Both the position numbers and the translations under genes were made by a program. The notes below the pieces were generated by a model. It saw only the letters and a list, made by a program, of their open reading frames with translations, had not been told where the DNA came from and did no database searches. A stretch of DNA of 64,000 nucleotides from Podarcis muralis. Its lineage: Eukaryota. The DNA lies in assembly GCF_964188315.1 (NCBI RefSeq), contig NC_135658.1, forward strand, positions 22,940,001-23,004,000, given 5' to 3'. Below, piece by piece: positions 1 to 20,008 of the stretch (the stretch's first letter is position 1; every line of letters starts with the position of its first letter).

Positions 1-658
1 ACCACGGACAGAATAATTGCCACACACAGGAAGAACAAAGATATAGTTTAAGTTTTTCACTTGTACATTTATAAATCATTTAATGTGTCAACACAAACAG
101 AAATTATTAATATTGCAGTTGTTATATAAGGGAGTATTGTTATTATGACCGGAATGCAATGAAAATTAATAAGATTTTGGAATGCGGGTTGCGAACATGC
201 CTCCCACACAGATAACATTAACAACCTAAGAGTCCACTGTAATTCGATATTTAAATTATTGATATCAATAATTGTATTATAAACTGGTATTGTTATAATG
301 AGGCTATTATTGGATTGTAAATGAAAACTAATAAAAATATTGTGGGGGGGACTAAAATGTGCATTTCTTACCCACCCTTTGCCCATGCTAAAATGTCTCT
401 CCTATGCAAACTCCCTCCATTTCTGTTTTATAGACTTGCAACCCTTCAAAAGAAATGCATATTTAAATACCCTGAAAACCTGTGCAAAAAGTGGGGTACA
501 CTTTTCACAAAAAGGGCCTAATGCCAAGAGCAAGAATACTTGGCTGAATCCCCCACCCAGCTCTACTTCACTCAAGTCTGACACTTGACCAGGCCTACAT
601 CATTCTGGCTACATTGCAACCCTTGCCTTTCTTTGCCCTCACTTGGAGTTCTGCTTAC

Positions 659-760
659 CGTCTCTCAGCTGACAATTACTCTACGGGCAGAAAGAGAGAG
701 TCCATAAACTGAGTAATGAAACATGGACGTGAGCAGGGAATTTAAAGGCTTCAGGACAAT
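659..760 (-). promoter_or_regulatory. Putative promoter and short non-coding exon module (copy 1); donor at 659/658
   Basis: Minus strand reads ...gccTTTAAAttccctgctcac...cagctgagagacg|gtaagc. Paralogous to 16441-16530. Confidence 0.45.
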
Positions 761-1714
761 GAAATGTAGGCACTCTCTGTCCTGAGCAACACCTCCCATG
801 CTCCACTGATCCATCACAGAGCAGAGCAGATGGAGAGGACTATGAAGTCTTCCTGGTCCTGTGCTTACCTCACCCCCATTACCAGTGGCTTTTAGGAAGT
901 GCCTGCAGAAGCCATTTGCAAGGGGGAGTGAGGAGAGTTATCGGAAGGGTGAGGACATCATTTCAGGGACAAAGACCAGGACCGTACAATTTGCTTTAGG
1001 ACAGGGTTGGGCAAACTGTCACTCTTCAGCCACATGCGGGTCCTCAGCCTAATTGCCACAAGTCCTCAAGCAGGGAGTTCAGACTTCCAGCAAAAGTGAT
1101 GTTACCTTTTCATGGGAAACCACTAAGCATGGAGGAAATGGGGAGGGAGGGCAACACATACAGAAGAGGGTGTCAGAGAGAGGGAAAAGAAGGTGTCTTG
1201 TATCTTGATAACTGTAGCTCCACTGTATGTGTGGATTAGTTTTCTCAAAGGGAGAGTTAGTTCCCTTATCAATCTGCTGTTCACAAAACCATTCAGGTGA
1301 AGCCATGACAGTTCACCTGATAGAAATGTAATATACCTTTGTGGTGTAGATACCGTATGTCCACAGATAACTAGAACGGCAGAATTTCACCATCAGCTTC
1401 ATAGTACCCTTCAGACTTTTACAGCAAGCCTCATACTGTTAGAGACCTACAAAGACCTGTTGGAGGACACAAACAATCATGAGAAAGAAAGGCTAATGCA
1501 GAGCTGCAAAGTCTTTAAAATGTTTATGAGGAGTGGGGAGATGGTGGTATGAGGCAAGTGCTTCCTATCTGCATACAGCAATGACTATCCCTACGAGCCA
1601 AAATAATGGGCCAAGATATACCACACTTGGTGCCTTTAGGTTTGGAAAATCAGCAAGCACCACTTCAGCAAATGAAAGCAATATTGCCCAATACTGTTGT
1701 TTGAATGGAAGGCA

Positions 1715-2228
1715 CTTAGGGACACTTAGAGACATCACCTTGCCAACAAAGGTCCGTATAGTTAAAGCTATGGTTTTCCCAGTAGTGATGTATGGAAGTT
1801 AGAGCTGGACCACAAACAAGGCTGATTGCCAAAGAATTGATGCTTTTGAATTATGCTGCTGGAGGAGACTCTTGAGAGTCCCATTGACTGCAAGAAGATC
1901 AAACCTCTCCATTCTGAAGGAAATCAGCCCTGAGTACTCACTGGAAGGACAGATCCTGAAGCTGAGGCTCCAATACTTTGGCCACCTCATGAGAAGAGAA
2001 GACTCCCTGGAAAAGACCCTGATGTTGGGAAAGATGGAGGACACAAGGAGAAGGGGATGACAGAGGACAAGATGGTTGGACAGTGTTCTCGAAGCTACAA
2101 ACATGAGTTGACCAAACTGCAGGAGGCAGTGGAAGACAGGAGGGCCTGGCGTGCTCTGGTCCATGGGGTCACAAAGAGTCGGACACGACTAAACGACTAA
2201 ACAACAACAACAACAGCAGCAGCACTTT
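1715..2228 (+). mobile_element. 5'-truncated RTE-BovB LINE 3' fragment
   Basis: Encodes DITLPTKVRIVKAMVFPVVMYGS...[16 protein letters not shown] and ends in a (caa)n tail. 17-bp TSD tgtttgaatggaaggca at 1698-1714 and 2229-2245. Confidence 0.92.
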
Positions 2229-3374
2229 TGTTTGAATGGAAGGCAGATACGGACACATCCAGACAAGGAAGCAGACCTGAAAAACTTGGTGCCTACTCGG
2301 GATGAAAAGCCCTCCAACGGAACAACAGCAAGAGCTGCAACATCTTTAGTGAATGCTTTGAAGGAAGAAATGTCTCTGCAATTGATGTCTAAACAGAAGC
2401 ATATGAATATATGGATGGACATTCTGGAAGCAAAGTTTGGGATTTAAAAAGAAAGATGGAGGATAATGAAACACTGATCCACTCACATGGACATCGGAAA
2501 TCTGTTTGTGCAATGGGACTTTTCGTTTCTTTTCTTCCTCTGCCAGCTCCTCATCCCCCCCCCCCCTAAAAATCTGCTCTGGACGGTTCCCCAACCCTTT
2601 GGAGCCCCTGTTGAGGTTCTGCAGGGGATGCAAAGGGAGGAAAGGAAGTCCCATTGCTCAAGGGAGTGTTCTCCACTCAAGTACATCCATGACCTTTAAT
2701 TTCTAAAACAGATTATTGACTCTAGAAAACTGGCTAATCCAAATACCAAAGCTAACTGCTGAAACCAACTGCTGCTTGAAGGCAAGCACTGAAACAAATT
2801 GCTGAACTGTCCCTCTCACCATTTTTTTTGCTGAAATGAATCATTCATTGAAATGAATTTTTATCATCTTAATCTGATACACTATAATGTTACAGGGCTG
2901 GAGGTAGTCTTGTGTCCATTATCCATGATCTTCCTGTTAGATTAACTGAAGTGAGTTATGCATGGGGTGACTTTGAAAACTGTACAGAAAGTTCTGCATG
3001 GGGTATAAAGGCTCTTAAAGGGCTTGTGGACAATTTCACTATATTGCACTAGTGATTTATTGTCTACTCCTTAAATGGCCTAGGAACAGCTTACCTCAAG
3101 GATCACCTCCTCCCAGGTCTACTTACCTGGACCCCAATATCATCATCAGAGGCTCTCTTCCAGTGCTCCTGGATTCAGGGTCTTATAGGTGGTGTCAGCC
3201 GGGTTATGAAATGCCTTCCCTGGAAACGCCCACCTGGTGCCATCTTTGTGATGTTTACTGTCCAAAGTTTTAAAACTGAACCTTTGAATTCACAGGGTTT
3301 TAGGTGTGCTGTGTATATTTTTTGTGATGTTGTATATTCATCTTTATATTGTGTTATTGAAACTGTTGCTTTTT

Positions 3375-4455
3375 TAAAATAAGATATTTATTAATTTTTT
3401 CAAAGAATACACATAGATTTATGAACTAAAAAAAATTACAAACAAAAAATTACAGTGTTGAAAAAAAAAGATAGAAATTACAGAAAAACTAAGAAAAAAT
3501 ACAGATAGAAAATACATACACAAACCCAGAAAAACAAAAAAATGCAAAATTTAAAAAACCAATCCAGTTTTCAGAGCTTGTAGGTTCATTTACTTATTTT
3601 CTTGACTTCCTCACACCTCCCCTTTTTGTATTCCCATTTAAATAGTTGGTTCAGCAAATCCTAGCCTTCTTTCATTTATCTTGACTTTTTATCATGACCT
3701 ACTATAACAATATATTTTCATCCATTATCAATCCATATTTACATATTCTTATTACTCTTATTTACCAACGTCACTTATTTCCAATCCAACGTCATTTTAA
3801 CATTCATTAATTTTACAGTATTTCTGCAGATAGTCTTTAAATTTCTTCCAATCTTCTTCAACCAACTCTTCTCCCAGGTCTCGGATTCTGCCGGTCATTT
3901 CTGCCAATTCCATGTAGTCTATCACCTTGGTCTGCCACTCTTCCAGTGTGGGTAGTTATTGTGTCTTCCAATACTTTGCAATCAGTATCCTTGCTGCTGT
4001 TGTCACATACATAAAAAAGTTTCTATCCTTCTTTGGCACCAATTGGCCGGCCATGCCCAAGAGAAAGGCCTCTGGTTTCTTCAGGAAGATATATTTAAAT
4101 ACCTTTTTCATTTCATTATAGATCATCTCCCAGAAAGCCTTAATCTTTGGGCACGTCCACCAAAGGTGAAAGAATGTACCATCAGTCTCTTTACATTTCC
4201 AACATTTATTATCAGGCAAATGCTAGATTTTTGCAAGCTTGACTGGTGTCATGTACCACCTATATATCATTTTCATAATATTCTCTCTTAAGGCATTACA
4301 TGCCGTAAATCTCAAACCTGTGGTCCACAACTGTTCCCAGTCAGCAAACATAATGTTATGTCCAACATCCTGTGCCCATTTAATCATAGCAGATTTAACC
4401 GTTTCATCCTGAGTGTTCCATTTTAACAGCAAATTATACATTCTTGATAGTATCT
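3375..4455 (-). mobile_element. 5'-truncated L1/Tx1-type LINE (ORF2 C-terminus with CCHC and 3' UTR)
   Basis: CWKCKETDGTFFHLWWTCP motif. TSD tgaaactgttgcttttt at about 3358-3374 and 4456-4472. Confidence 0.88.
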
Positions 4456-5728
4456 TGAAACTGTTGCTTTTTAAAGCTGGAGTGTGGGGGCTGATTCTAT
4501 TGAGATTTATTTTTTAATTAATTAAATGTGTTTGCCCAGAACAACACAAAGTGACTTACAACGAGCCATTAGTGCATTTTAGGGAGGGCATCGCCATATC
4601 CCAGTTCTCTTTTGGCAACATCTCTTCCCCCACCTCTTCATTTCACTTTAGGAAGCAGTTGAGCACACTTCCGGCTTTCTGCATTCTGAGGCCTTTTCCT
4701 CCTCTTAGCCAGGTGACCTCTTCATCTTCCTAGGGCTGAGCACTATGGGAAGCAGCTCCTCCTAACCCACTTCTGTCTGCCACAACCACAAGAAGTGAAT
4801 GTTTCACCTTGTCACCCCTAGTTTGCTCGCACACACTCTGACACACGTGCTGCCTGTATCTCCTCTTCCTGCTCCTCTCACAACTTATAAGAAGGGACAC
4901 ACTTACTCTTCATTTCGTTTCATTTTTATTGGTGAAAGAACAGAACAGGCAATCAATGATATTATAGAAAGATGACTCTCCTGTACTTGCGTATGAGAGA
5001 AATAATCAAAAGGAATTCAATAAGAGAAAATAACATATATAGTCTATGCTGTCAGAAAATTTAGTATTCCGGTGATTCATAAATGAACGTCATTCCGGCG
5101 TTCAATATATTTGTCTGGTGAATGTCTTTTTTATTAATATTTTCAATGAGTTTTACTGTAACAACAAAAGAGTGAACTATAACGAAATGTATCTCAAATG
5201 ATACAGAGAATGAACCAAACATTTCCCCCCAACATAACATGAGGGTTAGCGTGTGTAATATTTTAAGACTTAATTGAAACAAGAGAATCACTTAGCTGGT
5301 TTTTATGATCTGGTGCATGACTACTACATTATAAGCAAGCTTGATTTTTTTTTTTAAAGCAGCCTAAATATACTTGAAAGTTGAAAGAGACCCCAGAGAT
5401 TTCCAAAATCATGCTATATTCTGTCTAAATACAATCCCTTTACCTCATTCAGGGGGTGGGGAATCAGTGACCCCTCCAACAGATGAGTCACTGTTGCTTA
5501 CAAGGAAGGACAGAAAGAGAAGCAGTCGGCACAGTGCAAACACACCACCAGGAGTACTGGATTGGCTCTGCCAGTGTGTTTGCACCACACCAAGCTCCCC
5601 AATGACTTGCCTCTCTCCCTTCCAGCAAGCAGCAGCAGTTCAGCTGTCAGGAGGCCAGGTAAGCACCACCACTCCACCCTGTCATCCTCTGTTGACAGTG
5701 GAAGAGGGCTGTGCAGCAGGGTGGTGGA

Positions 5729-7629
5729 TCAGTCACAACAGAACATCTTCACGTCACGAAGTTCTACTTTACCAAGCATTTGATTCTCATTCGCCACCCT
5801 TGTTTGGATGCCACATATGAAGCCCCTAGGGCAGCGCTTGCTCATTTTGCCCTCTTCCATCCGTTGAAAGATATCTTTCTTCACTTTAGCCCCACCACTG
5901 CAGAGGACCTCAAGGTTACTGACTGCATGAGGAATTAGCGGGTGTGGTAATTCAATAGTCAAAGAAAAGGACACCATGTTGCCTTGGGGGCATTTCTGAA
6001 CCGCAACCCATTCCCCGAGCCTGTAAAGAAAAGGACAAGGATGGCAATGTCTAAATAGAAATTTATATACCACAACTTTGTCAATGTATTTTTATTTTTA
6101 AAGTCTCTCCAGAGATATAATTCCAAATTAGAGCAAAAAGCTTTTTTCAGAAAGGATGTATAGAACAGATTCGCCTTCAAATGTGAACCAATTTGAATTT
6201 TGCCTCCACCCCTAGAAGTAAGTTTCACAGGACTTTGTGCAAGCATGTATATTTTGGGGCTGTTAAACTCAGAGTGTGTCCAGATTACCATTTGCCTTTA
6301 ATCTAGCATGAAATATTTCGATCTACCCCTCCCGCTCCTACCCCAAACTTCCAAGCAACAAGTTAATAAAGGAAGAGAAATTCAAAAAGCTACTCACTTT
6401 CCACTTTTAGACTCTACTGTTTTCCCGTCAGTGCAGTGGAGACGGATGCCCTTCAGAGTGAAATCTTTTCTATAGGCTTCATTTACATCTCTGCGAAACT
6501 GGTGGAGAACAGAGGGGAGGAAAGACTGGTGCTTCAATCTGCATCTGCAGTACTGGCAACATTTATGTGTGAGCAAAACAACATTTTTTCAGTGCAAATT
6601 TCTATGAAATACAATGATGGGGAAAAGCTGTTTGTATTCTGTCTGTGAGACTTTTTATTATATTTGTGGTTACTGATTTATTTTGGGGCACTCTACTCCA
6701 CCCTCAAAAGAGGACAATATTTGCATACTACACAAAGCATATGCAAATTTAATGAAAAGCTGTCCTCAGAGGTGTCGGAGCCTCCGCTACGACCGAGCTG
6801 GAAAAGCTCATCCTCCAGTCGAGTCCTCTGGAATCGCCTCCGACGATGATTAACGACCTGAGCCTCTGATAAGGCTCCAGGCACGTTCCCTCATTACGCA
6901 GAGTATCCAGCAGCAGGGAAGGACGAGAAATATGAGCTACATTGCAAAGAGTTTGATTTCTAGTTACGCATACAGAAAAGCATACATCCTCTCTCTGTGA
7001 AAGCAGAGAGCAACTGGAAAACAAAGGAACAGGAAACCAGTAACATCACATCCGTCTCCCATCTTCCGTGAGACTTCCAACAGCCTCGAATCTCTGGAAT
7101 GCAAAACAGAGTCTTGTGACTCCAAGCACTGCACAGTGGCAACACACGGAAACCTAACATGAGGACCCAGGCCATATACTGTGTGTTGGGGACAGAAAAT
7201 CCTGTTGGCATGCCTGGGATTCAGTAATTAGTAAACTGAACTATATATTAGATGAAACAGACTTGGCATCTTGGTGTTTCTGGGACCCTGCGTGGGTTCT
7301 GTGATAGAGGCTGCATTTTTCATTCTGTCTGCTGCTTTCCCTGCCCTTCTTTCTAAATAAAGGTGTTTGTTTGCTTGTGCTTTTCATACGTCTGTATAAT
7401 ATTGTGACCACGACTTAGCATCAGGGTGTCAAAATTCAGACTATAGATAGGCATTTACCTTCATTTGGAATCCATTTGCATATCCCGTGGGACAGAATTC
7501 AGGTTTTCCCCATATACCATCCTTCCCTCCATTGGACACAGTGAGGACTGCATTATGTTTTCGGTCTTCTGCATCACAGAGATGGTAGGAGAAGAAGAGG
7601 AAGACCACAGCGCTGACAGGGAGCTCCAT
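5729..7629 (-). CDS. VMO1: VMO1-like gene A (divergent), 3 coding exons 7629-7459, 6498-6398, 6020-5729; 187 aa secreted beta-prism protein
   Basis: Spliced ORF: MELPVSAVVFLFFSYHLCDAEDRKHNAVLTVSNGGKDGIWGKPEFCPTGYANGFQMK / [33 protein letters not shown] / KLGEW...ICGIQTRV...DVKMFCCD*. Canonical sites AAG|gtaaat, ccag|TTT, AA|gtgagt, tacag|G. Phases 0/2 match the other paralogs. Signal peptide and all 8 mature Cys present. Confidence 0.88.
6761..7431 (+). mobile_element. LTR-like insertion(s) in the intron between coding exons 1 and 2 of gene A
   Basis: TG-start/CA-end segments with AATAAA near 7356; resembles other LTR-like elements here. Boundaries and TSD unresolved. Confidence 0.4.
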
Positions 7630-7873
7630 GGAAAGTGATCTGCACCAGATCTAGCTGCAAAAACTAAATGGATGAATAACAGCATTAAGAATTTATTCCT
7701 TAGGAATAGTGGCTCTTTCCTCTGGTCCCAAATTTGCATTTTCCTCTGGAGGGAAGTGTGGTTACTTTTGGTTGATGGAGTAAAATCAGTTGATGGCTTT
7801 TCTGACTACACCTTTTGATTTCTAACTAACAAAAATGTGAATTTCTTACCCACCCTTCACCCTTGCCAAAATG

Positions 7874-7996
7874 TACAGCCGTACCTTGGTTCTTGAACAG
7901 AATCCGTTCCGGAAGCCTGTTCAACTTCCAAAAACGTTAAAAACCAAGGCACGGCTTCTGATTGGCTGCAGGAGCTTCTTGCACTCAATAGGAAGC
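7874..7996 (+). mobile_element. Tigger/mariner-type MITE left part (right part about 13773-13907), split by BovB
   Basis: tacagccgtaccttggtt terminus; aggaagcc duplicated on both sides of the BovB. Confidence 0.55.
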
Positions 7997-18332: not shown

Positions 18333-18364
18333 TGACATGTTGTACATGCCTGGTTTAGAGGGTA

Positions 18365-18480
18365 GCATGAGACTCTTAATCTCAGGGTTGTGGGTTTGAA
18401 CCCTACATCATGCATTGCAGGGGATGGGACTAGATGACTCTGATAGTCCTTTCCAACTCTATTACTCTATGATTCTATTA
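18365..18480 (+). mobile_element. tRNA-derived SINE with CR1-like tail (relatives at about 38305-38432 and 51550-51660, minus strand)
   Basis: gcatgagactcttaatctcagggttgtgggtttgaacc...ggactagatga...ttccaactct...gattcta. Confidence 0.65.
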
Positions 18481-18659
18481 TTATTTTCACTATTCCTAAA
18501 TAACTTATGTGCACAAATTTGTTCAGGAAAGTTTTTTTAAACACATTATATTAAGGAAAATTGCTCTGCAGAGTTGCCTGTATTAGGCGACATGACATGC
18601 AAAAATTTACATGTGTATATTGGGAGGAAAATGTACTGAAATGCTGGTGAATTTTCTTG

Positions 18660-18660
18660 A

Positions 18661-18721
<61 letters not shown>

Positions 18722-18723
18722 AA
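18660..18723. repeat. (AAGA)n microsatellite
   Basis: Direct reading. Confidence 0.95.
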
Positions 18724-19046
18724 TGCAAATTGATACGGAAGTGTGAAGAATTAGCTTAAGACTGAAATAGTGAGAAACTGGTATGGACAGGTTCACCTTT
18801 CACTATCCATAGCTGAGCAGAGAGCAGAGGAACAACTATAGAGTTTCTATGACTTGCCCATCCCCAACACTGGTTTCCTTGAGTATGTGCCTCCAAAACC
18901 AATTAGCCTTAGAGTGTACTTTGGCACTCTACCCTTTCCCTTTTCATTCTTTTGTACGTAATGCAGTTGGTTACTTCCCTCTTGCTATCCATCCAGTGAC
19001 TTGATTGGCCTATGGATTTCTGGCACATGTGTCTGCAAGAAACATA

Positions 19047-19305
19047 CCATATTTTTCGCTCTATAAGACGCACCAGACCACAAGACGCACCTAGTTTTTG
19101 GAGGAGGAAAACAAGAAAAAGAATATTCTGAATCTCAGAAGCCAGAACAGCAAGAGGGATCGCTGCGCAGTGAAAGCAGCAATCCCTCTTGCTGTTCTGG
19201 CTTCTGGGATAGCTGCGCAGCCTGCATTCTCTCCATAAGACGCACACACATTTCCCCTTACTTTTTAGGAGGGAAAAAGTGAGTCTTATAGAGCAAAAAA
19301 TACGG
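19047..19305. mobile_element. Tc1/mariner-type MITE
   Basis: TIRs ccatatttttcgctctataagac / gtcttatagagcaaaaaatacgg flanked by TA. Confidence 0.8.
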
Positions 19306-20008
19306 TAAATAAGTATAGACTGTAATAATCAACAATGTGTTTAAGCAAGAATCACCCTTTGAATGAATTCATGGGTCTTGTGAAGGAAAAGCATACATTT
19401 CCCTTTTCTCATTTGCTTCCTTTGGAAGGAAAGAAGATAAGCCACTCAAAAGAAAGGTACACCTTGTTATTTAAGAAGGAACATCTTGTGATATATTTAA
19501 AATCCAAAACCAGAGCAGCCTTGTGCTACTTAATGAATGATAAATTACTGAGGTACTTGCAGTAAGGTACAGTACCTAGTATATCCCTGAGAAGAGAATC
19601 TCCTGTCCTTCATTTTGCCTGAATTTGGCTCTGAGCCTGTTGCAACCAGTGGAATGCAACCAGTCCCTTTGAGGAAGCATGAATGTATGTCTTTCTTTAT
19701 CCTATTGACAACATTCATATATTGTTCAATAGTTACCGGGAACAAATAATCACAGTTAGAAATCACAGCAGCAAACCATACCAAGCAGCCCTAAAGCACT
19801 GAAATAGCTTTAAAAAAGTAAAACACCTGGGAAAATGGAAAGGTCTTCACTTAATAGTATTGGGGCCACCCAAATAAGCTTAGCTGGGCAAGGCATTAAA
19901 TAACCAGGATGCCACTACCAAAAAGACTCTTTCCACCCATCACACCTTACTTGGTGGAGGCACCCAAAGAAGGAACCTTAAAGTGGATGTGTCAATAAAA
20001 AGATATTT

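What the first reader, a model, noticed from the sequence alone, without database searches (positions are those of the whole stretch)
5729..7629. Gene A: intact VMO1 fold with all three DDTA(L/A)N motifs replaced and the charge reversed
Seen: the frame, splice sites, signal peptide and all 8 Cys are kept. The three motif positions read RKDFTLKG, LIPHAVSN and GKVELRD, against [14 protein letters not shown] and DDTA/TLND in B, D, E and F. Only 2 of the 6 conserved Trp remain. A hand count for the mature protein gives about 27 K/R vs 19 D/E (net about +8), against about 8 vs 17 (about -9) for F. Established (recalled): these acidic loops line one end of the prism and were proposed as the sugar-binding site. 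Inference: a neofunctionalised cationic paralog with a different ligand or a membrane-active/antimicrobial role, not a decaying pseudogene.
Basis: partly seen in the sequence, partly recalled or inferred. Interest (0 to 1): 0.8.

Follow-up and report, generated by a model that had tools for sequence, protein, structure and literature searches.

The report
Lizard VMO1 paralog without its signature site
A wall-lizard copy of the egg- and tear-protein VMO1 keeps its three-sided beta-prism scaffold, is spliced and transcribed and stays intact across lizard genera, but has replaced all three copies of the family's conserved acidic motif, so it probably works as a secreted protein with a new binding face, not as a dead gene.

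Summary
Gene A (7629..5729, minus strand) has three exons with GT/AG borders and encodes 187 aa. It keeps 8 mature Cys and 2 of 6 Trp. It has 27 K/R against 19 D/E (pI 9.2). RKDFTLKG, LIPHAVSN and GKVELRD stand where paralogs B, D, E and F have DDTA(L/A)N.

It is a true VOMI/VMO1 member: Pfam E 1e-30, and the predicted fold matches 1VMO at TM 0.85-0.87.

It is not decaying:
- Contigs from three studies carry exactly the predicted junctions.
- Podarcis muralis, P. raffonei and Lacerta agilis keep intact orthologs plus extra A-like copies.
- The coding sequence has no indels, while the flanking intron and upstream DNA collect about one per 100 nt.
- Of columns at least 80% conserved in the family, A keeps 23/25 outside the motifs and 2/11 inside (p 3e-5).
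- dN/dS outside the apical loops is about 0.37.

The A stem is very long (about 1.3 substitutions per site, dN/dS about 1.0-1.3).

Two corrections apply. Three quarters of the charge shift is the motif replacement itself. A cationic VMO1 is also not new, since chicken VMO1 has pI about 10 with intact motifs, and net charge within the A clade varies from +3 to +9.

An antimicrobial role is untested. A tegu protein shows a parallel motif loss. This is a new variant of a known family, of moderate interest.

The parts
5729..7629 (-). Gene A (A1): three-exon VMO1/VOMI-family gene, 187-aa precursor
   Evidence: ORF assembly and splice sites. Pfam PF03762, E 1.1e-30, 107 bits against a cut-off of 25. 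99% identical to P. muralis XP_028581447.1.
7459..7629 (-). Exon 1 (codons 1-57): start codon, hydrophobic signal peptide (codons 1-20, 7629-7570), first strands of repeat 1
   Evidence: Alignment to mature chicken VMO-I puts the likely cleavage near A20/E21 (inference). Junction 7459/6498 is present in contigs of runs X1 and X2.
6398..6498 (-). Exon 2 (101 nt, codons 58-91): apical loop 1 and the replaced motif 1
   Evidence: Both flanking junctions are seen in contigs.
5729..6020 (-). Exon 3 (292 nt, including the stop): repeats 2 and 3
   Evidence: Junction 6398/6020 is present in contigs of X1 and X4.
6448..6471 (-). Motif-1 position: RKDFTLKG in place of G-DDTALNG
   Evidence: DFTLKG is invariant in all seven A-clade sequences.
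5915..5938 (-). Motif-2 position: LIPHAVSN in place of G-DDTAANN
   Evidence: The first Asp here is kept in 112 of 116 non-A family representatives.
5753..5773 (-). Motif-3 position: GKVELRD in place of DDTALND
   Evidence: KVELRD is invariant in the A clade.
5300..5728 (-). 3' untranslated region (at least 429 nt covered by a contig contiguous with exon 3); AATAAA at 5135
   Evidence: X1 record 1 covers 5300-5783. The poly(A) signal scan is. The true 3' end is not mapped.
6499..7458 (-). Intron 1 (960 nt) with a high-copy transcribed repeat at about 6779-7141. P. raffonei has about 3.7 kb more here.
   Evidence: Depth up to about 540 in all three contig runs. Colinearity with L002.
6021..6397 (-). 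Intron 2 (377 nt), used as a neutral yardstick
   Evidence: Window against L. agilis: JC distance 0.088 and 3 indel events in 362 aligned nt.

Best explanation
Gene A is a transcribed, selectively maintained, lineage-specific paralog (A1) of the VMO1/VOMI beta-prism family in lacertid lizards.

History. It arose by tandem duplication inside the VMO1 cluster. Its stem branch then took about 1.3 amino-acid substitutions per site. After that it came back under constraint.

What changed. The burst spared the scaffold: 8 Cys, the core Gly, Trp, Leu and Phe residues, and the strands. It replaced all three copies of the family's signature D-D-T-A-x-N. By homology with chicken VMO-I and by strand geometry, these motifs sit at the end of the prism opposite the disulfide base, where the acidic cavity proposed as the sugar site lies. 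In A this apical face is no longer acidic. It carries F, L, I, P, H, V, K and R instead.

Most likely mechanism. A is a secreted, disulfide-stabilised prism that has lost the ancestral acidic (sugar-type) site. It presents a remodelled, neutral-to-basic and more hydrophobic apical surface to a different partner. The three loops in front of that surface keep diversifying between the A copies.

Shown: the gene model, splicing, family and fold membership, motif loss, scaffold retention, ORF maintenance, and the rate pattern.
Inferred: secretion, the location of the motifs on the apical face, the loss of sugar binding, and the existence of a new ligand.
For: Gene model and counts.

Family and fold: Pfam VOMI E 1e-30. 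1vmo_A matches by sequence at E 1.8e-30. The AF2 model has pLDDT 86.6 and pTM 0.85. Foldseek top hit is 1vmo_A, TM 0.85/0.87.

Transcription: contigs carry exactly 7459/6498 (X1, X2) and 6398/6020 (X1, X4), with GT..AG ends. They come from three studies, and most intron bins are empty. X2 also carries the A2-type residues, so a second A-like copy is expressed.

Conservation: intact A1 in P. muralis, P. raffonei and L. agilis, and intact A2 in L. agilis.

ORF maintenance: 0 indels in 564 nt of CDS, against 3 per 362 nt in intron 2 and 3 per 292 nt upstream, for the same species pair.

Selective replacement: A keeps 23/25 non-motif conserved columns and 2/11 motif columns, Fisher p 2.8e-5. Sister S1 keeps all of them.

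Rates:
- A1 orthologs have omega 0.48 (p 0.036), and 0.36-0.38 outside the apical loops (p 0.009-0.02).
- The A branch has dN 0.34-0.42 against 0.11-0.15 on paralog branches at similar dS, giving omega about 1.0-1.3.
- The A stem is 1.27-1.31 substitutions per site in the trees, with the clade supported 100/100.

Within the A clade:
- variable columns are 9/65 in strands against 32/102 in loops (p 0.010);
- the derived motif residues are as conserved as the rest, 4/21 against 37/146;
- variation concentrates in the 10 residues before each motif, 16/30 against 25/137, p 2e-4.
Against: - The whole-gene omega for A1 orthologs has a bootstrap interval of 0.24-1.04, so purifying selection is only modestly significant with three species.
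- A1 against A2 gives omega 0.7-1.1.
- The stem omega (about 1.0-1.3, CI 0.6-2.5) is compatible with a fully relaxed phase and does not require positive selection.
- One P. muralis A-like copy (XP_028581567.1) ends in ...FCL and lacks a terminal Cys. P. raffonei A1 has an extra Cys (R59C).
- The bulk RNA-seq run X20 (12% of it read) had no reads on the exons, so expression is restricted or low, and the tissue is unknown.
- The three runs with spliced contigs are only guessed to be RNA.
- No A-like protein was found for Zootoca or other lacertids in the protein databases.
- The fold model relies on an alignment dominated by motif-bearing relatives, and its confidence is lowest in exactly the three remodelled loops.
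- The loop partition for omega was chosen after seeing the variable sites.
Confidence: 0.6

Rival explanations
1. Relaxed, slowly dying duplicate. A lost its function when the motifs decayed, and it is still intact only by chance or by gene conversion among the tandem copies.
For: - Stem omega is about 1.0-1.3.
- The crown omega interval reaches 1.04.
- A1 against A2 gives omega 0.7-1.1.
- The P. muralis copy P0015 has lost a terminal Cys.
- No reads fell on the exons in run X20.
- The Podarcis A2 and A3 copies group with Podarcis A1, not with Lacerta A2, which hints at gene conversion or turnover.
Against: - At a branch dS of about 0.3, a neutral 564-nt ORF should have collected several stops and indels. 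None is seen in at least 5 copies.
- The CDS has 0 indels, against about 1 per 100 nt in adjacent non-coding DNA.
- A keeps 23/25 conserved non-motif columns.
- Strands are more conserved than loops.
- Omega is 0.36-0.38 outside the loops.
- The motif-bearing sister S1 has a higher omega (0.92) than A1.
- Correctly spliced contigs come from three studies.
Confidence: 0.15
2. Cationic antimicrobial or membrane-active effector. The gained positive charge lets A bind anionic microbial surfaces or glycosaminoglycans, as proposed for chicken VMO1.
For: - The mature protein has net +8 and pI 9.15.
- Only 6% of non-A family representatives have pI of 9 or more.
- Chicken VMO1 is cationic, binds heparin and inhibits Listeria at 100 ug/mL (PMC4904793, PMC9363672).
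Against: - The charge is not conserved in the clade. Net charge is +9 in the window's A1, +6 in L. agilis and P. raffonei A1, +4 to +5 in the P. muralis A2/A3 copies, and +3 in L. agilis A2.
- Most of the shift is just the loss of six motif Asp.
- Chicken VMO1 reaches pI about 10 with the motifs intact, so the motif loss is not explained.
- The chicken activity is modest, and human VMO1 showed none in the study cited in PMC4904793.
- No amphipathic or membrane-active segment was identified.
Confidence: 0.15
3. Non-lectin decoy or partner-binding regulator. A keeps the family's protein-protein surfaces (for example those used for lysozyme or mucin association) but cannot bind the glycan, so it modulates or competes with the motif-bearing paralogs.
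For: The scaffold and conserved non-motif columns are retained. A is co-located in a cluster with motif-bearing paralogs. VMO1 is reported to associate with lysozyme and ovomucin (as summarised in PMC9363672 and PMC4904793).
Against: No interaction surface is mapped for any VMO1. Co-expression with the paralogs was not examined. Continuing diversification of the apical loops fits an active binding face better than a passive decoy.
Confidence: 0.1

Closest known systems
[quoted passage not shown]
   Same: About 40% identity over the whole mature chain. The eight Cys sit at the same positions. Both have three ~53-residue Greek-key repeats, and the predicted fold matches at TM 0.85-0.87. Both are secreted and cationic.
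   Different: Chicken VMO-I keeps RDDTALN, GDDTAAN and RDDTALN. Gene A has none of them. Chicken VMO-I has glycan-related activities reported in the literature, and nothing is known for A.
Motif-bearing lacertid paralogs S1/S2 (e.g. P. raffonei XP_053241231.1, L. agilis XP_033001647.1) and Z (L. agilis 189-aa gene next to A1)
   Same: Same tandem cluster and the same three-exon structure. The signal peptide is very similar (70% identity to S1). They are the nearest relatives in the trees: A is sister to S1+S2 at 85/86 to 96/88 support. Two of the Trp losses are shared with the S paralogs.
   Different: S and Z keep D-D/N/M-T-x-L-N in all three repeats, and S1 is acidic (pI about 5.4; Z's pI was not computed). 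A is only 36-38% identical to S1 in exons 2-3, against 62% in the mature part of exon 1. The A stem is about 8 times longer than the S stem.
Salvator merianae (tegu) uncharacterised VOMI protein A0A8D0C4U2
   Same: Eight Cys are kept and Trp is reduced to 3. The motifs are degenerate (DNPVLSG, AERVASN, RESAVTD). It is strongly cationic, with 21 K/R against 8 D/E and pI 10.5. Teiids and lacertids are both Lacertoidea (recalled).
   Different: Only 35% identical to A, and closer to B (42%). It sits on its own very long branch. A clade with A is neither supported nor rejected (AU p 0.30). It still has Asp at the first position of motif 1.
Jacalin-related and other beta-prism I lectins
   Same: Same overall beta-prism architecture, with Foldseek hits at TM 0.5-0.6. 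In these lectins the sugar binds in loops at one end of the prism.
   Different: About 10% sequence identity, no shared motifs and no disulfide base. The similarity is in fold only, so they are not family members.

Membership tests
VOMI / VMO1 family (Pfam PF03762) | Significant full-length match to the family profile | tested here: met
   107.3 bits against a gathering cut-off of 25, E 1.1e-30, profile positions 2-167 of 167.
VOMI / VMO1 family (Pfam PF03762) | Beta-prism of three Greek-key repeats, as in 1VMO | tested here: met
   AF2 model with pLDDT 86.6 and pTM 0.85. Foldseek top hit is 1vmo_A, E 2e-16, TM 0.85/0.87, rmsd 2.8 Å. This is a prediction, not a solved structure.
VOMI / VMO1 family (Pfam PF03762) | Eight conserved Cys (four disulfides at the prism base) | tested here: met
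   All eight are at the aligned, nearly invariant columns. Disulfide pairing itself cannot be tested here.
VOMI / VMO1 family (Pfam PF03762) | D-D-T-A-(L/A)-N motif once per repeat (the family's most conserved non-Cys feature) | tested here: not met
   0 of 3 in A and in all A-clade sequences. The first Asp is present in 107, 112 and 101 of 116 non-A representatives, and none lacks all three.
VOMI / VMO1 family (Pfam PF03762) | Three-exon gene in the tandem VMO1 cluster, with the exon phases shared by the paralogs | tested here: met
   Exon 1 is 171 nt in phase 0, exon 2 is 101 nt, and exon 3 starts with one nt of a split codon, as in B, D, E and F. Synteny with L. agilis and P. raffonei is shown.
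VOMI / VMO1 family (Pfam PF03762) | Carbohydrate binding or transferase-like activity | not testable with these tools
   Reported for chicken VMO1 only (as summarised in PMC9363672).
Cationic antimicrobial proteins | Conserved net positive charge | tested here: inconclusive
   Net +8/+9 in the window's A1, but +3 to +6 in the other A-clade members.
Cationic antimicrobial proteins | Microbicidal or membrane-permeabilising activity | not testable with these tools
Processed or unprocessed pseudogene | Stops, frameshifts or lost splice sites | tested here: not met
   The ORF and GT/AG sites are intact in the window, P. raffonei, L. agilis A1 and L. agilis A2.
Processed or unprocessed pseudogene | No spliced transcript | tested here: not met
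   Contigs with both exact junctions come from three studies. The RNA nature of those runs is inferred from the coverage pattern.
Processed or unprocessed pseudogene | dN/dS about 1, spread evenly | tested here: inconclusive
   Whole-gene omega is 0.48 (CI 0.24-1.04). Outside the apical loops it is 0.36-0.38 (p 0.009-0.02). Changes are uneven: strands 14% variable, loops 31%.

The most novel reading that the evidence does not exclude
The A1, A2 and A3 genes are a young lacertid subfamily that has turned the VMO1 beta-prism from an acidic sugar-site protein into a non-lectin recognition scaffold. The fixed, remodelled apical floor (DFTLKG, PHAV-N, KVELRD) is conserved. The three loops above it diversify between copies at dN/dS above 1, as in immune or reproductive recognition proteins. 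A tegu protein may show the same transition, either independently or from a common Lacertoidea ancestor.
Probability: 0.25. Interest if true: 0.6.

Novelty: new variant of a known kind. Interest (0 to 1): 0.42.

Why it matters
The biochemical role of VMO1 is still uncertain, although it is abundant in egg membranes and tears. The triple DDTA-N motif is its most conserved feature, yet it has not been tested by mutagenesis.

Gene A is a natural experiment. It has the same scaffold and lies in the same genomic cluster, but all three motifs are replaced. It is also expressed and conserved.

Comparing recombinant A with its motif-bearing neighbours (B, F, S1) would show directly what the motif does. 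It would also show what a beta-prism can do without it.

A is also a clean example of a burst of change followed by renewed constraint after tandem duplication.

No paper describing it was found in the searched library. In RefSeq it is only labelled 'VMO1-like'.

Tried and rejected
- Positive selection on the stem. Three-taxon NG86 branch estimates give omega 1.0-1.3 with wide intervals. One outgroup choice gave 2.35, with a bootstrap interval of 0.98-19.4 that still includes 1. This does not count as proof. No PAML-type branch-site test was available.
- The 3' flank as a neutral yardstick for A against Z. The flank is 88-89% identical in Podarcis and 79% in Lacerta, while exon 3 is 66% identical and the end of the intron 63%. 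The flank has probably been homogenised or shares a repeat, so it is unusable.
- Z as the sister of A. Non-coding similarity suggested it, but the trees put Z with Sceloporus XP_042312083.1 and put A with S1/S2, or leave A unresolved.
- Frameshift origin of the new loops. Codon-by-codon comparison of the window sequence shows multiple point changes per codon and no shifted frame.
- Tegu A0A8D0C4U2 as an ortholog of A. This is neither supported nor rejected.
- The first homolog search by DNA reference failed because the reference spans introns.
- Shimizu et al. 1994 (PMC394907) is not held, so the placement of the motif Asp in the cavity could not be read from the source.
- Tissue of expression.
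- Literature searches for VMO1 in lizards, Podarcis, Lacerta and squamates found nothing relevant.
Full report
**1. Observation.**

Reading the minus strand of 5500-7900 and assembling exons 7629-7459, 6498-6398 and 6020-5729 gives a 564-nt ORF of 187 codons. The donors are GTAAAT and GTGAGT, and both acceptors are AG.

A tblastn search of the window with this protein finds the other VMO1-like genes. I rebuilt them:
- B, 26849-22918, minus strand.
- D, 39503-36116, minus strand.
- F, 53320-49801, minus strand.
- E, 43030-45328, plus strand. It has ATT where the start codon should be and has lost two Cys.
- C, with exon 1 at 31086-30916 and exon 3 at 29318-29027. No exon 2 was found.

B, D, E and F read [14 protein letters not shown] and DDTALND (DDTTLND in D). 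At the same places A reads RKDFTLKG (6471-6448), LIPHAVSN (5938-5915) and GKVELRD (5773-5753).

Mature A has 8 Cys, 2 Trp, and 27 K/R against 19 D/E (pI 9.15). F has 6 Trp and 8 K/R against 17-18 D/E (pI about 4.3).

**2. Family and fold.**

- A matches Pfam VOMI (PF03762) over the whole profile, E 1.1e-30.
- It matches the chicken VMO-I chain 1vmo_A at E 1.8e-30. The chicken chain carries RDDTALN, GDDTAAN and RDDTALN.
- I built an AlphaFold2 model of the mature P. muralis ortholog on a 114-sequence alignment. This ortholog differs from the window's protein at two residues, one of them in the signal peptide. The model has pLDDT 86.6 and pTM 0.85. Its confidence is lowest in the three loops ahead of the replaced motifs.
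- Foldseek returns 1vmo_A first (TM 0.85/0.87, rmsd 2.8 Å), followed by jacalin-type prisms at TM 0.5-0.6.

**3. How unusual the motif loss is.**

A full HMMER scan of 1.84 billion 50%-identity representatives found 479 relatives. The A cluster has no neighbour above 46% identity.

I aligned the 116 non-A sequences of 150-260 aa from the two searches and the window:
- The first motif Asp is present in 107, 112 and 101 of them for repeats 1, 2 and 3.
- Thr is present in 96-99 and Asn in 93-105.
- None lacks the Asp in all three repeats.
- Every A-clade sequence lacks it in all three.

The nearest parallel is a tegu (Salvator merianae) protein, A0A8D0C4U2. Its motif positions read DNPVLSG, AERVASN and RESAVTD. 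It has 8 Cys and pI 10.5. It sits on a very long branch. A clade with A is neither supported nor rejected (AU p 0.30).

**4. Is A alive?**

*Transcription.* Contigs of three runs from three studies were laid on 5300-7900.
- They carry joints 6498/7459 (X1, X2) and 6019-6020/6398 (X1, X4), with CT..AC ends on the plus strand. These are the predicted GT..AG introns.
- Most intron bins have no coverage, and the contig sets are far smaller than a genome. The runs therefore behave like RNA, although their type is only guessed.
- X2 also carries changes that recode ANENQM to GNEHEV. That is the sequence of the second A-like copy of P. muralis (XP_028581444.1), so that copy is expressed too.
- A bulk RNA-seq run (X20, 12% read) had no exon reads, so expression is restricted or low.

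*Orthologs.* The protein database holds A1 from P. muralis (99%), P. raffonei and L. agilis (89%). It also holds two extra A-like copies from P. muralis. The genomic loci show an intact A1, with a second A-like gene (A2) about 5.7 kb (P. raffonei) to 7.5 kb (L. agilis) downstream. The L. agilis A2 is complete and intact. The P. raffonei locus holds only A2's first exon.

*Indels.* Between the window and L. agilis there are 3 indel events in 362 nt of intron 2 and 3 in 292 nt upstream. There are none in 564 nt of CDS. At that rate about 5 would be expected (Poisson probability of none about 0.007).

*dN/dS (NG86).*

| Comparison | omega | Detail |
|---|---|---|
| A1, Podarcis-Lacerta, whole gene | 0.48-0.50 | bootstrap 0.24-1.05, p about 0.035 |
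| A1, Podarcis-Lacerta, mature part | 0.42 | p 0.025 |
| B orthologs | 0.20 | |
| S1 orthologs (motif-bearing sister) | 0.92 | |
| D-F (recent duplicates) | 0.87 | |

A1 is therefore more constrained than some motif-bearing neighbours.

*Where the changes fall.*
- Of the columns at least 80% conserved in the rest of the family, A keeps 23 of 25 outside the motifs but only 2 of 11 inside (Fisher p 2.8e-5). S1 keeps all of them.
- Within the A clade, 9 of 65 strand positions vary against 32 of 102 loop positions (p 0.010).
- The derived motif residues are as conserved as the rest, 4/21 against 37/146.
- Variation concentrates in the ten residues before each motif position, 16/30 against 25/137, p 2e-4.
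- Outside those loops omega is 0.36-0.38 (p 0.009-0.02). Inside them it is 0.9-3.6, on small counts and with a partition chosen after the fact.

**5. History.**

- In maximum-likelihood trees the A clade has 100/100 support and a stem of 1.27-1.31 substitutions per site. It is sister to the lacertid S1/S2 genes at 96/88 and 85/86 support. The placement is unresolved in one tree that includes Z.
- Three-taxon estimates give the A branch dN 0.34-0.42 against 0.11-0.15 for the paralog branches, at similar dS. This gives omega about 1.0-1.3, not significantly above 1.
- The picture is a burst at or above the neutral rate, followed by renewed constraint.
- The burst is uneven. A is 62% identical to S1 in the mature part of exon 1 but only 36-38% in exons 2 and 3.

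**6. Charge.**

- Mature A is +9, against -3 for S1. Nine of these twelve units lie inside the three 10-column motif windows. The 'charge reversal' is therefore mostly the motif replacement itself.
- Only 6% of non-A family members have pI of 9 or more. The archetype chicken VMO1, however, is cationic (pI about 10), binds heparin and is weakly anti-Listeria, with its motifs intact (PMC9363672, PMC4904793).
- Within the A clade the net charge runs from +3 (L. agilis A2) to +9.
- High charge is thus neither new to the family nor the conserved trait of the clade. The conserved trait is the loss of the acidic motifs and the new residues in their place.

**7. Mechanism.**

The review PMC9363672 describes four disulfides at the base of the prism. 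It describes a negative cavity at the top that appears suited to binding sugars.

In each repeat the DD pair lies about ten residues before the Cys that ends the following strand. It should therefore lie at the end opposite the disulfide base. This is an inference, because I had no coordinates.

Replacing D, D and T in all three repeats with K/D/F, I/P/H and G/K/V would remove that acidic cavity and make the apical face more hydrophobic and basic.

I conclude that A is most likely a secreted prism that has given up the ancestral site and uses a remodelled apical face for another partner. That partner is unknown. An antimicrobial role is possible but rests on charge alone.

**8. Novelty.**

[quoted passage not shown] Searches of the paper library for VMO1 with lizard, Podarcis, Lacerta, squamate or reptile found no description of it.

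It fails one defining feature of the family (the motif) while meeting the others. I file it as a new variant of a known kind, of moderate interest.

Noticed in passing
window 18333-19312; L002 1-3300; L006 19829-22797 + L001 3133-3426: L. agilis and P. raffonei carry a further motif-bearing VMO1 gene (Z, 189 aa) between B and A1. In the window the colinear DNA breaks at about 18540-19040, and Z's exon 3 has no orthologous match, so Z seems to be deleted or rearranged here.
   Followed up: partly
window 31086-30916 and 43030-43200: Exon 1 of 'C' and exon 1 of E are 98% identical inverted copies (4 differences in 171 nt). The E copy reads ATT for ATG. C's exon 1 is only 60% identical to the P. 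raffonei C protein, no exon 2 was found, and exons 1+3 alone are out of frame. C looks like a rearranged, probably dead gene.
   Followed up: partly
window 6779-7141 (intron 1 of A): A high-copy repeat, with contig depth up to about 540 in all three RNA-like runs and many loose ends, sits in intron 1. P. raffonei has about 3.7 kb of extra sequence in the same intron (L002 10868-14552).
   Followed up: no
window 4892-5728 vs L002 1853-2709 and L001 3427-4260: The 3' flank of A1 and that of Z are 88-89% identical in Podarcis but 79% in Lacerta, while exon 3 is only 66% identical. This suggests gene conversion or a shared repeat in the flank.
   Followed up: partly
window 5779-5793 (run X2 contig): One contig carries T5779C, G5782C, T5785G and G5793C. 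These recode ANENQM to GNEHEV, the sequence of the second A-like copy of P. muralis. That copy is therefore transcribed, and it lies outside this window (expected just beyond position 1).
   Followed up: partly
window 7630-7846: A contig of X1 runs unbroken from exon 1 to 7846, 217 nt upstream of the ATG. A possible acceptor (tttttgcag) sits at about 7656, but no joint to it was seen in the three runs. This has a bearing on the scan's other note about a distal promoter, but does not settle it.
   Followed up: no
protein P0045 (Salvator merianae A0A8D0C4U2): A tegu VOMI protein has degenerate motifs (DNPVLSG, AERVASN, RESAVTD), 8 Cys, 3 Trp and pI 10.5. It is either a parallel to gene A or a very old relative of it.
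   Followed up: partly
proteins P0015 (XP_028581567.1) and P0014 (XP_053241714.1): One P. muralis A-like copy ends in ...MFCL and lacks a terminal Cys. P. raffonei A1 has an extra Cys (R59C). Some A copies may be drifting.
   Followed up: no
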